Shown here one piece after another: positions 40,151-53,288 of a stretch of 64,000 nt of DNA. Numbering within the stretch: position 1 is the stretch's first letter; every line of letters begins with the position of its first letter. Below the pieces are notes generated by a model that was not told the DNA's origin, ran no database searches, and was given only the letters and a program-made list of their open reading frames with translations. The translations under genes and the position numbers were made by a program. The DNA is taken from sequence record MT612988.1. The stretch is one strand, 5' to 3'.

Positions 40151-40264
40151 GTGAAGTTAGTTCAGTTGGTTAGAATGCCGGCCAAAAAAAACGAAGTCTG
40201 ATAAGATTTCATTCTGCATTCACATGCACGCCGGAGGTCGCAGGTTCGAGTCCTGCACTTCACC
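40151..40264 (+). ncRNA. tRNA-Asp-like body with ~43 nt inserted in the anticodon loop
   Basis: GTGAAGT/ACTTCAC, Asp-type D arm, CCGGC/GCCGG stem, T arm; insert has GAAGTC-TGATAA-GATTTC hairpin plus CTGCAT. Confidence 0.75.
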
Positions 40265-40274
40265 TTCAAATTCT

Positions 40275-40399
40275 GGAGAGTTAGCTCAGTCTGGTAGAGC
40301 AAAAGAATGTTAAAGAATACTGACAAGCATTCATGCTGCAAACCTTAATAACTAGGTAAATCTTTTTGTCACGCGGTTCAAATCCCGTACTCTCCACCA
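40275..40399 (+). ncRNA. tRNA-like RNA with an expanded anticodon loop
   Basis: GGAGAGT/ACTCTCC+ACCA, D arm, AAAGA/TCTTT stem enclosing GAATAC-TGACAA-GCATTC plus CTGCAA. Confidence 0.75.
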
Positions 40400-41955: not shown

Positions 41956-42071
41956 AGTCGGGTAGCTCAGTGGTAGAGCACGAAGAATGATACTGACAAG
42001 TATCGCTCCAGCACTCCTTCAATTGCCTGTTAAGCACGTGGTCGCTGGTTCGAATCCAGCCCCGACTACCA
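41956..42071 (+). ncRNA. tRNA-Asn(GTT)-like RNA with a 41-nt insertion between positions 28 and 29
   Basis: AGTCGGG/CCCGACT+ACCA; CG|TGC-CTGTTAA-GCACG; insert 41983-42023 has GATAC-TGACAA-GTATC plus CAGCAC. Confidence 0.82.
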
Positions 42072-43936: not shown

Positions 43937-43941
43937 GTTTT

Positions 43942-44028
43942 AGCTTGCATACTGCAATTTAACTTAATCTATTGATCGCTCGGCGAACTCAGTTCAGACA
44001 GCGATAAACAGACCAAAGAACGCAAGCT
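43942..44028 (+). ncRNA. free-standing helix-CTGCAA RNA
   Basis: AGCTTGC/GCAAGCT closing helix, ATA-CTGCAA, inner ATCGCT/AGCGAT hairpin. Confidence 0.65.
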
Positions 44029-44038
44029 GTTGAATAAT

Positions 44039-44732: not shown

Positions 44733-44790
44733 AGTAATCTTACAGCAAACAATACAAAACTTTTATTTGGAAAAAGCAAAAAGGATTACT
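44733..44790 (+). ncRNA. free-standing helix-CAGCAA RNA
   Basis: AGTAATCT/GGATTACT helix, TA-CAGCAA, inner CTTTT-ATTTGGA-AAAAG anticodon-like hairpin. Confidence 0.65.
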
Positions 44791-46204: not shown

Positions 46205-46715
46205 ATCATGCGACGAATGATACTTTGCTTCGGCATATCACGAGCATGGTGAGAGAGACAATATACAGCAAACAATTGAAATTACTTAAAAGAAGTGATG
46301 ATCTTAACCTGGGCTGATTTTAACCTGAGCTTGCTTAGGCGCAGCTTGAAAGGAAAGATTCTCTCTGTCTAGAAATAGTCAGATAGGCGCGTCGCTGAAA
46401 CAGACGATATTTGCTTGTTGAGAATCAATAAGCTAGTCAACTCCGATTTATGCAAAAGACGAAAAAACACTTCGGTATTGTCTGTACTTAATTCGTCGGA
46501 AACGACACTGTAGCCGAAAGGCAAGATACGCTAACTTAGATGTTAGCAGCGATATAGGATGTATCGCGTGGCATTATTATGAACGTTTCTAGTCATCGTC
46601 ATGTAAAACAATCAAAACTAAGCAGAGGTAACAGTACCCACTATGTGGTTCCTCACTCAGACCATGAATATATGGTGTCAGCCAGTGTGCGATTAAATGA
46701 GTTAATTACTGCAAT
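46205..46715 (+). ncRNA. ~500-nt highly structured non-coding region containing a helix-CAGCAA module (46252-46366)
   Basis: Many stable hairpins (C-UUCG-G and GAAA tetraloops); no RBS-led ORF. Confidence 0.6.
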
Positions 46716-46716
46716 T

Positions 46717-47715: not shown

Positions 47716-47792
47716 GCGCACGTGGTCCAATTGGCAGAGGCATGAGGCTTAAAATCTCAGGGATGGCGGTTCGAATCCGCCCGTGCGTACCA
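47716..47792 (+). tRNA. tRNA-Leu(TAA), short variable loop
   Basis: Loop CTTAAAA. Confidence 0.9.
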
Positions 47793-47908
47793 AATTCTAG
47801 CATAAGCCGCGTTCTATACGAAGCTAGACTACCGCCGTTGAAAAACGGTCTCAGCCGAGCGAAAGCTGACAGGTGTTAGGGATTAAAGAGTCGCGGCAGT
47901 TTATTCAA

Positions 47909-47985
47909 GCCCAACTAGTCCAATTGGCAGAGGCACTAGTTTCAAACACTAGGAGTTCCGAGTTCGAATCTCGGGTTGGGCACCA
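47909..47985 (+). tRNA. tRNA-Leu(CAA), short variable loop
   Basis: Loop TTCAAAC. Confidence 0.9.
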
Positions 47986-48153
47986 AATTCACTTAGCAAC
48001 GCGAATCGAAAGAGAGTGGATAGACCTGCTAAGAGTCCCGCTAGGTCTTTAAATTATCTAAAGTGGATCTGCGAAGCGCGTGGCACACGTCAGCAATAAG
48101 AGCAAATATGTGTCTGAGCATGAGAGCAGCATGCCATTAATTGATGAGACGTT

Positions 48154-48242
48154 GGAAGCATGGTCTAAAGGTATGACAGCACCCTGCTAAGGTGTCGGAC
48201 GTTAATAGCGTTCTCTGGGTTCGATTCCCAGTGCTTCCGCCA
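48154..48242 (+). tRNA. tRNA-Ser(GCT)
   Basis: Loop CTGCTAA, long variable arm. Confidence 0.92.
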
Positions 48243-48247
48243 AATTC

Positions 48248-48507
48248 GCAATAAGACATTGTACAGCAATCATTACAAAATCAAAGCAAACTTTAATAGT
48301 AATGAGGCGCACTAGCTGCTTTCTCAGTGATGACGTGAGCCTGTCGCATTCTCATGGTAGGAAATGACCATTAAGACGGTGTTCGTACTGTCAAACGAAA
48401 TAGGACTCATGCCGAATCATGAGTATTTTTCCGATGAGAAACATCGTTATAGTCAATTGAGATTTAAGGAAAGACGATAAAACATTTCTCGAATGTCTGT
48501 GTATTGC
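48248..48507 (+). ncRNA. ~260-nt helix-CAGCAA RNA at the end of the tRNA operon
   Basis: GCAATA-AGACATT/AATGTCT-TATTGC closing helices, GTA-CAGCAA, multiple internal hairpins, terminator immediately after. Confidence 0.7.
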
Positions 48508-48514
48508 ACATTAG

Positions 48515-48538
48515 AACCTGCCTTGAGCAGGTTTTTTT
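48515..48538 (+). terminator. intrinsic terminator ending the tRNA operon
   Basis: AACCTGC/GCAGGTT followed by a T tract. Confidence 0.85.
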
Positions 48539-48628
48539 GTTTATGGCGTTTGATAATTGATATAGTCTAAAGAAACAGTTAGATATGATTCTAAATACAG
48601 ATGAACTCAAATCAATTGGAGAAATGTC

Positions 48629-48835
48629 ATGAGTGATAAAACATTCGATAAGTTCATGTTAGAACTAGAAGAACAAAAGCCAGAAGATAAAAAGAAAAAG
48701 AAACGTTCAGTAAAAGATCGTGTCAAGTCTGGTGCAAAGAAAGCTGGTAAAGCTGCGAAAACTGGTGCTAAAGTAGCCGCTGGTGCTGCTGCGGTAGGTC
48801 TTGCAACTCAAGTAACAAAGAAATCTAACGAATAA
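48629..48835 (+). CDS. Lys/Ala-rich candidate internal head protein
   Basis: MSDKTFDKFMLELEE; TCTAAATA at 48590; highly basic body. Confidence 0.65.
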   Translation: MSDKTFDKFMLELEEQKPEDKKKKKRSVKDRVKSGAKKAGKAAKTGAKVAAGAAAVGLATQVTKKSNE

Positions 48836-49062
48836 TGAAGAACATTCATCAAAAGTCTCATGCTCGTGAAGGGCGTGGTTCTGGTAATGGGCACAATGAA
48901 AATTGGCGCAATGCACCTCTTTGGAAGAACATTGGTCCCAATGCTGAAAAGATTAAAAAGGAAGCAGAAGCCGCAGAGAAAGACGAAGAGATTGATAAAC
49001 CCAATCTCGATGAGTTATCGCAGCGTGAGCGTATGCGCCGTTTACAAAGCATAGCGCATTAA
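48835..49062 (+). CDS. hypothetical protein
   Basis: TAATG-coupled to the upstream ORF. Confidence 0.65.
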   Translation: MKNIHQKSHAREGRGSGNGHNENWRNAPLWKNIGPNAEKIKKEAEAAEKDEEIDKPNLDELSQRERMRRLQSIAH

Positions 49063-51200: not shown

Positions 51201-51229
51201 GTTTACATGCATTAAAATTCGCGTATAAT
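51201..51229 (+). promoter_or_regulatory. T4-type early promoter of the TROVE/vWA gene
   Basis: A-tract, GTTTAC-17 nt-TATAAT. Confidence 0.85.
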
Positions 51230-51241
51230 CACTTCATCAAA

Positions 51242-51282
51242 GACATTTTACAGCAATTAATTATGAGGAAATGAACAATGTC
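51242..51282 (+). promoter_or_regulatory. leader helix-CAGCAA module enclosing the RBS and start codon
   Basis: GACATT (51242-47) pairs with AATGTC (51277-82), which includes ATG 51278; TTA-CAGCAA at 51248-56; RBS GAGG in the loop. Confidence 0.75.
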
Positions 51283-52714
51283 AGTATTTATGAACGCAAT
51301 GCAAACAAACGATTCACGCACAGCAAACGGTGCAGTTACTCACAGCACTTCAGGTAACGAGTGTCTAAACTTGTTCTTCGGTATTGCTGCTATGCGTGGC
51401 AACGATCAGTCTAAAACACTGTTCGGTCGTGCGTTTGCAGAAAACCCAGAACTAGCGACTCGCATTCTTTTGTGGTCTCGTGATGTTCGAGGTGGTGCGG
51501 GTGAACGTGGTACTTTCCGTACTCTATTCACTAAACTTTGTAATGAACAGCCTGACGTAGCTCGTGCTGTAATGTCGAAAATTCCAGAACTAGGTCGTTA
51601 CGATGACTTGATTTCTGCTTTCGGTACACGTCTTGAAAAAGATGCGATTACAATGTGGTCGAACGCAATTGTCAATGACAAGAATGGTCTTGCTGCGAAG
51701 TGGTTCCCACGTGAAAACAGCAAAAACGGTCATGTGTTCAAGCGCACAATCAAGTCTCTTGGCGTAACTGCGAAGCAGTGGCGTAAGATTCTGTCGCTTC
51801 TGTCTGACACTGTTGAGCAGAAGATGTGTGCGCAAAAATGGGATGCAATCGACTTCGGTAAGTTGCCTTCTGTAGCGTCTGCTCGTTATCAACAAGCATT
51901 CGGTCGTAACGCTTCAACACGTTACACAAACTACATCGAGTCACTTCAAAAAGGTGAAGCGAAGATCAACGCTGGCGCATTGTTCCCATACGATGTCGTT
52001 AAGAGCGTTAGTCACGGTAATGCGTCTGTAGCGAACGAGCAATGGAAAGCTCTGCCAAACTACATGGAAGGTTCTGATGAACGCATCATCCCTGTTGTTG
52101 ACGTGTCTGGCTCTATGAGCACGCCAATTAACGCAGGTACAGACCGTTCAGGTGTGACTTGTAAGCAAGTTGCAATGTCTCTTGGGATTTATGTTGCTGA
52201 ACGCAATGAAGGCATCTTCAAAGATCAGTTCATTTCGTTCTCAAGCGACCCGCACTTCCACCAGTTGCGCGGCTCTTCATTGAAAGAGCGTCTTGATAAC
52301 ATGAATCGTTCAGGCGAAGACATGAGCACGAACATCGGTAAGTGCTTTGATGTTCTGTTAGAACGTGCGAAGCGTGCAAATCTTTCACAAGAAGATATGC
52401 CAACCAAGTTGCTTATCATGAGTGACATGGAATTCGATCAAGCAAACACTGGTGGTGGTTGGTACGGTCGCGGTGAACCTGCGAACTTCGATGCAATCAA
52501 AGCCAAGTACGCACGTGCTGGTTATGAAATGCCACAACTGGTCTTCTGGAACATTCGTGGTCGTCTTGGCAACGTTCCGGTTAAAGCTGGTGAAGCGGGT
52601 ACTGCACTGGTATCTGGTTGTAGCCCATCTATCTTGACTTCACTGTTGGGTGGTGAGCTTGAGCCAATCAAGATCATGATGAAAACTGTAGGCGTCGAAC
52701 GCTACAGCTTTTAA
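51278..52714 (+). CDS. TROVE-like + vWA domain protein (Ro60/Rsr-related, DUF2828-like)
   Basis: N-terminal T.NGA..H.TSGN.CL.LFF, RDVRGGAGER, GRYDDL, AAKWFPRE helical region; vWA MIDAS DVSGSMS; SDMEFD; LVFWN. Confidence 0.88.
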   Translation: MSVFMNAMQTNDSRTANGAVTHSTSGNECLNLFFGIAAMRGNDQSKTLFGRAFAENPELATRILLWSRDVRGGAGERGTFRTLFTKLCNEQPDVARAVMSKIPELGRYDDLISAFGTRLEKDAITMWSNAIVNDKNGLAAKWFPRENSKNGHVFKRTIKSLGVTAKQWRKILSLLSDTVEQKMCAQKWDAIDFGKLPSVASARYQQAFGRNASTRYTNYIESLQKGEAKINAGALFPYDVVKSVSHGNASVANEQWKALPNYMEGSDERIIPVVDVSGSMSTPINAGTDRSGVTCKQVAMSLGIYVAERNEGIFKDQFISFSSDPHFHQLRGSSLKERLDNMNRSGEDMSTNIGKCFDVLLERAKRANLSQEDMPTKLLIMSDMEFDQANTGGGWYGRGEPANFDAIKAKYARAGYEMPQLVFWNIRGRLGNVPVKAGEAGTALVSGCSPSILTSLLGGELEPIKIMMKTVGVERYSF

Positions 52715-52757: not shown

Positions 52758-53288
52758 GTGAAAATGTTCGATTGGGAAGCGATAGAAACAGCTATCAATA
52801 ACAGTCATCCAAATAGCACAATATACGTTGGGTGTGATAGTAAGCGTAAAAGTGACATGATTAGTTACGCGACTGTGATCATAATTCATCTTGAAGGTAG
52901 TAAAGGTGCTCAAGTGTTTAAAGCAGTTGAGACTGAACCTGCATACTTATCATGTAAAGATGGTATCAGAAGTCGATTGATGAATGAAGTATACAAAGCG
53001 GGTGAAACTGCACTAATGGTTAAGCCAATGTGCGGTACTAGAGGCTTTGAAGTTCACGTTGACATCAACCCTGACCCTACACACAAATCTCACGTTGCCT
53101 ATAACGAAGCTAAAGGCACGATCATGGGATATGTTGGTCAAGAGCCCGTGTTCAAACCTGATGCGTTTGCTGCGTCTTGTGCTGCTGATTATGACGCAGT
53201 TCGAAGAGCAGATAAAATCGCTAAACGAAAAGAACTTAGACGGGCTAAACGAAAAGCAAAGAAACAAAAAACAAAAGGGCGCAAATAG
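52758..53288 (+). CDS. RNase H-fold protein (DUF458-like) with basic C-tail
   Basis: IYVGCDS, RLMNEV, EVHVDIN, ASCAAD acidic residues; GTG start with GAGG RBS. Confidence 0.75.
   Translation: MKMFDWEAIETAINNSHPNSTIYVGCDSKRKSDMISYATVIIIHLEGSKGAQVFKAVETEPAYLSCKDGIRSRLMNEVYKAGETALMVKPMCGTRGFEVHVDINPDPTHKSHVAYNEAKGTIMGYVGQEPVFKPDAFAASCAADYDAVRRADKIAKRKELRRAKRKAKKQKTKGRK

What the first reader, a model, noticed from the sequence alone, without database searches (positions are those of the whole stretch)
48248..48507. ~260-nt multi-hairpin RNA closed by the helix-CAGCAA module at the operon end
Seen: bounded by tRNA-Ser and a terminator, so both ends are defined. It is closed by AGACATT/AATGTCT plus GCAATA/TATTGC, with internal hairpins ACTCATG/CATGAGT, CGATG/CATCG and GACGGT/ACTGTC, and no ORF. 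It looks like a long Y-like RNA whose large domain could tether an effector, as Y RNA tethers PNPase.
Basis: partly seen in the sequence, partly recalled or inferred. Interest (0 to 1): 0.66.

Follow-up and report, generated by a model that had tools for sequence, protein, structure and literature searches.

The report
Large Y-like RNA of KVP40-type vibriophages
The stretch after the last tRNA gene of this KVP40-like Vibrio phage is a real, conserved, roughly 260-base folded RNA gene that matches no catalogued RNA family. It has a sister copy 2 kb upstream, and its closing stem carries the same short signal as the mRNA leader of a nearby Ro60-like protein gene, so it is probably that protein's large RNA partner.

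Summary

The window is a KVP40-like Vibrio phage. The RNA (here RNA-B, 48248-48507):
- is 92-100% conserved in about 27 Schizotequatrovirus genomes and 72% in nt-1/CZ01, with shortened versions in D482, F86 and 1.081.O;
- is unannotated in those records;
- matches no Rfam family.

New here: a paralog (RNA-A, 46250-46492) shares the closing module and a ~130-nt 3' domain. A covariance model of that domain finds exactly two copies per phage genome. Of its 23 pairs, 18 show compensatory changes (0/500 shuffles reach this).

The closing module is AAG, a 6-7 bp stem, (G)UAC-N-GCAA, then the stem and CUGU. It is repeated, with the same stem sequence, in the leader of ORF 51278-52714. I folded that ORF (DUF2828/DUF7788); its best structural matches are all Ro60.

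"Y-like RNA" is therefore a reasonable functional reading, but the RNA is not a YrlA or Y RNA family member. Binding and the role of the large domain are untested, and no expression data could be obtained. Earlier notes of this scan had already flagged the module and the Ro60-like gene on this same window.

The parts
48154..48242 (+). tRNA-Ser(GCT), last tRNA of the array, with CCA encoded. It defines the upstream boundary of RNA-B.
   Evidence: ARAGORN; Rfam tRNA at 55.5 bits.
48248..48253 (+). P0 5' arm GCAAUA. It pairs with 48502-48507.
   Evidence: Kept with different sequence in 1.081.O (GUAAAU/AUUUAC) and F86 (UGCAA/UUGCA).
48254..48260 (+). P1 5' arm (A)GACAUU, preceded by AA (the 'AAG' start). 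It pairs with 48492-48498.
   Evidence: Invariant in RNA-B. In RNA-A orthologs the same stem is GACAAUA/UAUUGUC, GAUAAU/AUUAUC (1.081.O) and GGCAAU/AUUGCC (F86), giving three compensatory positions.
48261..48269 (+). Unpaired conserved motif GUACAGCAA. The family consensus is (G/U)UAC-N-GCAA.
   Evidence: CAGCAA, CCGCAA and CUGCAA variants occur in orthologs and paralogs.
48270..48305 (+). Ha: an AU-rich hairpin, UCAUUAC...GUAAUGA. It varies between lineages.
   Evidence: Replaced or extended in nt-1/CZ01.
48306..48341 (+). Hg (GGCGCAC/GUGAGCC, with a G-A mismatch) encloses Hf (UAGCUG-CUUUCU-CAGUGA) and a 4-nt bulge. This is the most conserved block of the 5' domain.
   Evidence: 93.5% of cells paired against at most 47% when slid. 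Compensatory changes at C-G/U-A/A-U in Hg and U-A to C-G in Hf.
48354..48371 (+). Hh hairpin AUGGU-AGGAAAUG-ACCAU with an invariant loop. The stem is GAAGU/ACUUC in nt-1 and GAGU/ACUC in 1.081.O.
   Evidence: read directly from the sequences. A possible loop-loop contact with the Hf loop is unproven.
48375..48392 (+). Hc hairpin GACGGUG-UUCG-UACUGUC, the start of the 3' domain shared with RNA-A. RNA-A has a GNRA-loop hairpin at this position.
   Evidence: helix 1: 6 of 6 pairs with changes on both sides.
48405..48424 (+). Hd hairpin ACUCAUG-CCGAAU-CAUGAGU.
   Evidence: helix 2: 3 of 4 pairs with changes on both sides. nt-1 has UUGCG/CGCAA.
48432..48446 (+). He hairpin CGAUG-AGAAA-CAUCG.
   Evidence: helix 3: 7 of 8 pairs with changes on both sides. 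nt-1 has GCUUGU/ACAAGC.
48450..48456 (+). Invariant single-stranded UAGUCAA.
   Evidence: Invariant in all 12 sequences of A5.
48458..48491 (+). P2 hairpin UGAGA/UCUCG, enclosing a 24-nt conserved loop UUUAAGGAAAGACGAUAAAACAUU.
   Evidence: helix 4: the pair at columns 92-122 is A-U x8, C-G x7, U-A x2. Loop invariance.
48492..48507 (+). P1 3' arm AAUGUCU, the CUGU tail (a GUG bulge) and P0 3' arm UAUUGC.
48513..48541 (+). Intrinsic terminator hairpin plus U-tract, the end of the tRNA operon.
   Evidence: Conserved in orthologs. Homology with several relatives ends just after it.
46250..46492 (+). RNA-A, the paralog of the finding, between tRNA-Arg(TCT) and tRNA-Met. It has the same module and the same 3' domain.
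   Evidence: R1: 149.9 bits at 46359-46492 against 113.6 bits at 48375-48507.
51236..51283 (+). Leader of the Ro60-like gene: promoter TTTACA-16-TATAAT, then AAGACAUU-UUACAGCAA...AAUGUC. The 3' arm contains the AUG.
   Evidence: Conserved in nt-1, D525 and 1.081.O.
51278..52714 (+). Ro60-like protein gene (DUF2828 + DUF7788, vWA with MIDAS), the candidate protein partner.
   Evidence: Pfam; phrog_850 'RNA-binding protein'; AF2 model with pTM 0.73; top 13 Foldseek PDB hits all Ro60/TROVE.

Best explanation
RNA-B (48248-48507, or to about 48541 if the terminator hairpin is kept) is a structured non-coding RNA gene of KVP40-like vibriophages.

- Transcription (inferred): it is the last unit of the tRNA operon. 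Its 5' side would be freed by tRNA-Ser 3' processing and its 3' side ended by the intrinsic terminator.
- Fold (shown by covariation): the two ends pair (P0 + P1). This places the unpaired motif GUACAGCAA and a 3' UGU bulge next to a 6-7 bp stem. Between the ends lies a multi-helix body. Its 5' block is Hg/Hf/Hh. Its ~130-nt 3' domain (Hc, Hd, He, UAGUCAA, and P2 with a conserved 24-nt loop) is shared with the paralog RNA-A.
- Function (inferred): the closing module is the docking site of the phage's Ro60-like protein, because that protein's mRNA leader mimics exactly this module. This is the logic by which autoregulated RNA-binding proteins copy their primary RNA ligand. The large body would then serve as a second binding surface or scaffold, which would make RNA-A and RNA-B the large members of a phage Y-RNA-like set.
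For: Real gene:
- More conserved than its flanks. RNA-B alone is 94% identical to KVP40, against about 86% for the 800-bp region containing it.
- Found in 50 phage records.
- No conserved ORF.
- Fold z = -2.67.

Structure:
- 3' domain: 82.9% of cells paired against 64.7% shuffled, 18/23 pairs with double changes, 0/500 shuffles, slid controls at most 43%.
- 5' domain: 93.5% paired against at most 47% slid.
- P1 and P0 show compensatory changes.
- Exactly two copies in the window and in a whole related genome.

Protein link:
- The ORF at 51278 folds as Ro60: Foldseek E 3e-8, TM 0.5-0.58, full length, top 13 hits.
- The MIDAS DxSxS motif is invariant.
- The leader carries GACAUU-UUACAGCAA-AAUGUC, conserved in four lineages.
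- RNA-B lies 2.8 kb upstream on the same strand. That meets the proximity criterion used for bacterial and phage Y RNAs (within 4 kb, same strand; PMC4201824).
- In a distant phage (L077, protein 53% identical), two module-closed RNAs directly follow the homologous gene. One of them is about 245 nt and is followed by a terminator.
Against:
- No binding evidence of any kind.
- The module is unlike the Ro-binding helix of known Y RNAs, and nothing matches Rfam Y RNA families.
- The alignment used was fitted to the model, which favours the structure.
- Most 5'-domain pairs never vary.
- The 3' domain is missing from RNA-B of 1.081.O and reduced in D482 and F86, so it is dispensable in some lineages.
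- Distant phages with the same protein lack this body.
- No partner was found for the conserved P2 loop within the window.
Confidence: 0.55

Rival explanations
1. It is a real structured RNA, but it acts in cis only. On this view it is a 3' trailer that protects the tRNA operon transcript from exonucleases or guides its processing, with no trans-acting role and no link to the Ro60-like protein.
For: It lies between the last tRNA and the terminator. T4 also ends its tRNA cluster with two stable RNAs of unknown role, rnaD and rnaC.
Against: - The paralog RNA-A sits in the middle of the array, followed by about 220 nt and tRNA-Met rather than a terminator.
- A protective trailer would not need an invariant unpaired motif, or conserved loops shared with an mRNA leader 2.8 kb away.
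- T4 rnaC and rnaD share neither the module nor the domain.
Confidence: 0.15
2. It is a riboswitch-like leader. A ligand-sensing aptamer would control read-through of the terminator at 48513 into the small ORFs at 48629-49062.
For: A large conserved structure is followed directly by an intrinsic terminator and same-strand ORFs.
Against: - In ValKK3 and VH1_2019 the next gene is on the opposite strand.
- In VH7D, phi-ST2 and XZ1 the homology stops right after the terminator.
- KVP40 has a different ORF inserted there.
- P0 closes the fold independently of the terminator.
- RNA-A has no terminator.
- No Rfam riboswitch match.
Confidence: 0.05
3. It is a structured RNA that works independently of the Ro60-like protein. 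It could be a decoy or antidote against a host RNA-targeting defence, or a scaffold for another phage protein. The shared module would then be a processing or stability signal common to RNAs of the array.
For: - Several other array RNAs carry the same stem-motif-CUGU grammar.
- Phage tRNA arrays are commonly linked to countering host tRNA nucleases (general knowledge).
- The conserved 24-nt P2 loop and UAGUCAA look like recognition surfaces.
Against: The module's exact copy at the 5' end of the Ro60-like mRNA, overlapping its start codon, is hard to explain as a processing signal. Module RNAs also sit directly behind the homologous gene in an unrelated phage.
Confidence: 0.2
4. It is a small protein-coding gene, or the remnant of a mobile element or intron.
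For: A 38-aa ORF is present in the window and in KVP40. QD01 annotates a CDS here.
Against: The ORF is not conserved. Substitutions are compensatory in stems. There are no intron or ribozyme matches in Rfam.
Confidence: 0.03

Closest known systems
Bacterial and phage Y RNAs (YrlA/Yrn1) bound by Ro60/Rsr
   Same: - The ends pair into a stem next to a conserved element.
- It is encoded within 4 kb of, and on the same strand as, a Ro60-fold protein gene.
- The design is modular: a protein-docking stem plus a variable body.
- More than one RNA is present per genome.
   Different: - The partner protein belongs to DUF2828/DUF7788 and shows no sequence-level match to TROVE proteins.
- The docking module differs from the Y RNA Ro-binding helix.
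- It is 230-300 nt, against 80-130 nt.
- No tRNA-like domain was detected.
- No Rfam Y RNA match.
Dictyostelium Class I RNAs
   Same: The end grammar is the same: a start at AAG, a short 6-bp stem joining the 5' and 3' ends, a conserved unpaired motif directly after the 5' arm ending in C-N-N-CAA (C6, C9, A10 and A11 invariant), and a 3' end CUGU (PMC7919456). RNA-B reads AAG-ACAUU-GUACAGCAA...AAUGU-CUGU.
   Different: - Class I RNAs are 42-65 nt, eukaryotic, and transcribed from their own DUSE promoters.
- Their only reported direct binder is the RRM protein Rnp1A/CIBP.
- RNA-B is four to five times larger, has an extra outer helix P0, and is cut from a phage tRNA operon.
- Homology was not tested here.
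T4 species 1 and species 2 RNAs (rnaC, rnaD)
   Same: They are stable RNAs of unknown function, co-transcribed at the distal end of a T4-type phage tRNA cluster.
   Different: They share no sequence, module or domain with RNA-B, the covariance model R1 finds nothing in them, and rnaC ends in a tRNA-like T-arm.
Autoregulatory mRNA leaders that mimic the protein's RNA ligand (for example ribosomal protein operons, thrS)
   Same: The leader of the Ro60-like gene copies the P1 stem and motif of RNA-B and buries the start codon. This argues that the module is the protein's natural ligand.
   Different: This is an analogy of logic only. No repression or binding has been measured.

Membership tests
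Y RNA / YrlA (Ro60-associated RNAs) | Matches the curated covariance models (Rfam Y RNA families such as Deinococcus_Y_RNA RF01053) | tested here: not met
   No hit at gathering or at E<=10 on 47780-48620. The only Deinococcus_Y_RNA hit (17 bits) lies on tRNA-Leu.
Y RNA / YrlA (Ro60-associated RNAs) | Encoded within about 4 kb of a Ro60 ortholog, on the same strand | tested here: met
   RNA-B ends at 48507. The Ro60-fold ORF starts at 51278 on the same strand. The criterion is from PMC4201824. The protein is Ro60-like by fold only, not by sequence family.
Y RNA / YrlA (Ro60-associated RNAs) | Length 80-130 nt, with a long terminal stem and a large internal loop | tested here: not met
   A terminal stem is present (P0 + P1), but the RNA is about 260 nt with at least nine helices.
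Y RNA / YrlA (Ro60-associated RNAs) | tRNA-like domain (YrlA class) | tested here: not met
   ARAGORN and the Rfam tRNA model find nothing inside 48243-48512. A distant structural mimic cannot be excluded.
Y RNA / YrlA (Ro60-associated RNAs) | Physically bound by the Ro60 protein | not testable with these tools
   Only indirect evidence: mimicry of the module by the leader.
Dictyostelid Class I RNA | AAG start, about 6-bp terminal stem, 11-nt motif after the 5' arm with C6, C9, A10 and A11 invariant, CUGU end | tested here: met
   RNA-B has AAG / GACAUU:AAUGUC / uuGUACAGCAA / CUGU, compared with the description in PMC7919456. Motif position 3 is G here, against the invariant U.
Dictyostelid Class I RNA | Size 42-65 nt, own upstream DUSE promoter, dictyostelid genome | tested here: not met
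   About 260 nt, inside a phage tRNA operon.
New family: KVP40-type RNA-A/RNA-B (model R1) | 3' domain Hc-AUAGG-Hd-He-UAGUCAA-P2 with the conserved loop, closed by the module | tested here: met
   R1 scores 113.6 bits (E 7e-22) at 48375-48507. Covariation.

The most novel reading that the evidence does not exclude
RNA-A and RNA-B would be the first large 'Y RNAs'. On this reading they are scaffolds of roughly 230-300 nt with their own conserved tertiary fold. They would dock a divergent phage Ro60 through a stem-UACNGCAA-CUGU module that also defines the Class I RNAs of social amoebae. Through the conserved P2 loop and UAGUCAA surface they would recruit a second factor (a nuclease, a repair enzyme or a specific RNA) during infection. 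This would link a phage RNP, bacterial Ro/Y RNA quality control and an orphan eukaryotic RNA class.
Probability: 0.2. Interest if true: 0.85.

Novelty: new variant of a known kind. Interest (0 to 1): 0.62.

Why it matters
KVP40-type phages are well-studied T4 relatives, yet this conserved RNA gene and its paralog are unannotated in the GenBank records examined and absent from Rfam.

If the RNA is the partner of the phage Ro60-like protein, Ro/Y RNA biology extends in three ways:
- to a very large, uncharacterised protein family (more than 7,000 close homologs);
- to a new docking signal;
- to RNAs with a large autonomous fold.

It also yields a tractable phage-host system in which to ask what Ro-type RNPs do during infection, and a concrete candidate explanation for the conserved ends of Dictyostelium Class I RNAs.

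Tried and rejected
- **Rfam:** searched at gathering and at E<=10 on both RNA-B and RNA-A. Nothing beyond tRNAs and noise.
- **IMG/VR pattern scans:** three scans for conserved blocks returned only KVP40 and VH7D plus chance matches. No wider distribution was found. The metagenome scan was not used.
- **T4 rnaC/rnaD:** same genomic position but not related.
- **Coding reading:** rejected.
- **Riboswitch reading:** rejected because the downstream context is not conserved.
- **K-turn, C/D-box and hammerhead readings:** GUGAUGA and GAAA were considered by eye. The registers do not fit and partner boxes are not conserved, so these were dropped.
- **Target of the P2 loop:** no complement of 10 nt or more in the window.
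- **Loop-loop contact (Hf CUUUCU with Hh AGGAAA):** 4-5 bp are possible, but the variable pair is inconsistent across lineages. It stays a candidate only.
- **L077 long RNA:** its interior is unrelated to R1 and its fold z-score is only -0.5. It is a positional parallel, not a homolog.
- **Sequence-level link of the protein to Ro60:** not significant. Only the fold comparison shows it.
- **Own assembly:** not held. A 73%-similar virus record, G001, was used instead.

Full report
**What the window is.** The region is 100% identical to Vibrio phages vB_ValM_R10Z, R11Z and Va3, and about 86% identical to KVP40. The window is therefore a KVP40-like T4-type vibriophage (Schizotequatrovirus). It carries 28 ARAGORN tRNAs, or 31 Rfam tRNA hits, on the + strand between 40.1 and 48.2 kb. 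The finding lies between the last of these, tRNA-Ser(GCT) at 48154-48242, and a terminator-like hairpin with a U-tract at 48513-48535.

**Check of the observation.**
- The minimum-free-energy fold of 48243-48540 contains them, at -78.3 kcal/mol against -64.8 +/- 5.1 for shuffles (z = -2.67, 0/200 as good).
- ORFs on either strand are short.
- The only notable ORF (38 aa) is altered in nt-1 and absent in VS1, CZ01, 1.081.O, D482 and F86.

**Conservation.**
- The 303-nt stretch matches 50 phage records, all Vibrio phages.
- It is 92-100% identical in about 27 Schizotequatrovirus genomes and 72% in nt-1 and CZ01 (Mylasvirus). Only parts match in 1.081.O, the D482 group and F86.
- It is more conserved than its surroundings: 94% to KVP40, against about 86% for the 800-bp region containing it.
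- In nearly all records nothing is annotated under it.
- The downstream context is not conserved. KVP40 has an inserted ORF, ValKK3 and VH1_2019 have a gene on the other strand, and in several relatives homology stops at the terminator. This rules out a leader or riboswitch role for a conserved downstream gene.
- Three IMG/VR pattern scans found only KVP40 and VH7D.

**A paralog.** Scanning the array for stem-plus-CNGCAA arrangements turned up a second long RNA, here called RNA-A, at 46250-46492 between tRNA-Arg(TCT) and tRNA-Met. It aligns with the finding (RNA-B) at both ends and over a ~130-nt 3' domain. RNA-A has orthologs in 51 phage records.

A covariance model of the shared 3' domain (R1) gave these results:
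- exactly two strong hits in the window: 46359-46492 at 149.9 bits and 48375-48507 at 113.6 bits;
- exactly two hits in a whole related genome (G001);
- no hit in T4's tRNA region;
- no hit in distant phages that carry the same protein family.

**Structure and covariation.** The common plan, with RNA-B coordinates:
- P0: 48248-53 / 48502-07
- P1: 48254-60 / 48492-98
- Unpaired motif GUACAGCAA: 48261-69
- Ha: 48270-76 / 48299-305
- Hg: 48306-12 / 48335-41, enclosing Hf at 48313-18 / 48325-30
- Hh: 48354-58 / 48367-71, with invariant loop AGGAAAUG
- Hc: 48375-81 / 48386-92, UUCG loop (RNA-A has GNRA loops here)
- AUAGG
- Hd: 48405-11 / 48418-24
- He: 48432-36 / 48442-46
- Invariant UAGUCAA: 48450-56
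- P2: 48458-62 / 48487-91, around a 24-nt conserved loop
- P1 3' arm, then CUGU

Support for each part:
- **3' domain** (17 sequences of both paralogs): 82.9% of cells pair, against 64.7% in shuffles. 18 of 23 pairs show changes on both sides, no shuffle in 500 reaches any measure, and sliding the partners drops pairing to 35-43%. That alignment was fitted to the model, which favours it, but the slid and shuffled controls are clear.
- **5' domain of RNA-B:** 93.5% paired against at most 47% slid, with two pairs carrying compensatory changes.
- **P1:** compensatory changes at three positions, namely GACAUU, GACAAUA, GAUAAU and GGCAAU, each with its matching 3' arm.
- **P0:** kept with different sequence in 1.081.O and F86.

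Lineages differ by whole hairpins. RNA-B is 176 nt in 1.081.O, about 218 nt in D482 and F86, and about 300 nt in nt-1. The body is therefore modular.

**Link to a Ro60-like protein.**
- ORF 51278-52714, same strand and 2.8 kb downstream, is DUF2828 + DUF7788, phrog_850 'RNA-binding protein'.
- Sequence searches do not connect it to Ro60.
- An AlphaFold2 model from a 30-sequence alignment has pLDDT 76 and pTM 0.73. Its 13 best Foldseek matches in the PDB are all Ro60/TROVE proteins, full length, E 3e-8 to 8e-5, TM 0.46-0.58. They include Xenopus and human Ro60, Deinococcus Rsr and the Ro60 of Thermus phage phiLo. vWA domains follow.
- The MIDAS motif DxSxS is invariant.
- The gene has a near-consensus promoter, TTTACA-16-TATAAT, ending at 51229. 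Its transcript should begin with AAGACAUU-UUACAGCAA...AAUGUC, whose 3' arm contains the start codon.
- This leader module is conserved in nt-1, D525 and 1.081.O.
- Its stem sequence is identical to P1 of RNA-B, which is itself invariant across lineages.
- In a distant phage (L077, protein 53% identical), two module-closed RNAs follow the homologous gene directly. The second is about 245 nt and ends at a terminator, but its interior is unrelated and its fold is not supported statistically.

**Interpretation.**
- *Shown:* a discrete, conserved, covarying, non-coding fold; a paralog; a shared closing module; a Ro60-fold gene nearby whose leader copies that module.
- *Inferred:* the module is the binding site of the Ro60-like protein (by the ligand-mimicry logic of autoregulated RNA-binding proteins), and RNA-A and RNA-B are its large RNA partners.
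- *Speculative:* the body tethers an effector, as the Deinococcus Y RNA tethers PNPase (summarised in PMC4201824).

The gene after the Ro60-like gene is an RNase H-like protein (PF04308), both here and in L076. It is a candidate companion but was not tested.

**Comparison with known systems.**
- *Known Y RNA families:* RNA-B does not belong to them. There is no Rfam match, it is twice the size, and no tRNA-like domain was detected. It does meet their genomic criterion (within 4 kb, same strand).
- *Dictyostelium Class I RNAs:* the end grammar matches the published description point by point: AAG start, 6-bp stem, motif with C6, C9, A10 and A11, and CUGU end (PMC7919456). Size, host and promoter differ, and homology is untested.
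- *T4 rnaC/rnaD:* analogs by position only.

Earlier notes of this scan on the same window had already pointed to the module, the Ro60-like gene and the Class I resemblance. I re-derived the fold similarity, the leader conservation and the Class I grammar independently. The paralog relationship, the shared 3' domain and its covariation are new to this report.

**Limits.**
- The window's own assembly is not held.
- Independent lineages are few, about six per paralog.
- No binding test is possible with these tools.

Noticed in passing
window 46250-46492: RNA-A, a ~240-nt paralog of the finding with the same closing module and 3' domain. It accounts for about half of the 'dense 500-nt RNA' noted earlier between tRNA-Arg and tRNA-Met.
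   Followed up: yes
window 46493-46716: The ~220 nt after RNA-A and before tRNA-Met is also conserved. In KVP40, nt-1 and VS1 it contains GUCGGAAACGAC-ACUACAG-CCGCAA, possibly another module RNA. In this window that motif reads ...GUAGCCGAAAGG.
   Followed up: no
window 43941-44029 and 44733-44790: Two short (58-89 nt) candidates with 8-9 bp terminal stems: UAGCUUGC-AUACUGCAA...GCAAGCUG-UU and AGUAAUCUU-ACAGCAA...AGGAUUACU-GU. They show the same stem-motif-CUGU grammar as RNA-B.
   Followed up: partly
window 52758-53288; L076 11747-12289: An RNase H-like gene (PF04308) follows the Ro60-like gene both here and in a distant phage contig. It is a conserved neighbour and a possible nuclease partner.
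   Followed up: no
L077 11444-11800: In a metagenomic phage contig, two module-closed RNAs directly follow the DUF2828 gene: about 65 nt (AGGUUCC-GUUCAGCAA...GGAACCU) and about 245 nt (GGAUCG-GUACAGCAA...CGAUCC) plus a terminator. RNA ligase and kinase genes lie about 4 kb downstream.
   Followed up: partly
window 48629-48835: A 68-aa Lys/Ala-rich basic ORF lies just after the terminator. It has no Pfam match, and it is displaced or absent at this position in some relatives.
   Followed up: no
window 48319-48324 and 48359-48366: The invariant loops CUUUCU (Hf) and AGGAAAUG (Hh) could form a 4-5 bp loop-loop contact. D482 shows one compensatory change, but nt-1 and F86 each lose a pair.
   Followed up: partly
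window 40151-40264, 40275-40396, 41956-42068: Rfam scores three unusually long (113-122 nt) stretches as tRNA, and ARAGORN does not call them. These are probably the insert-bearing tRNA-like genes noted by others.
   Followed up: no
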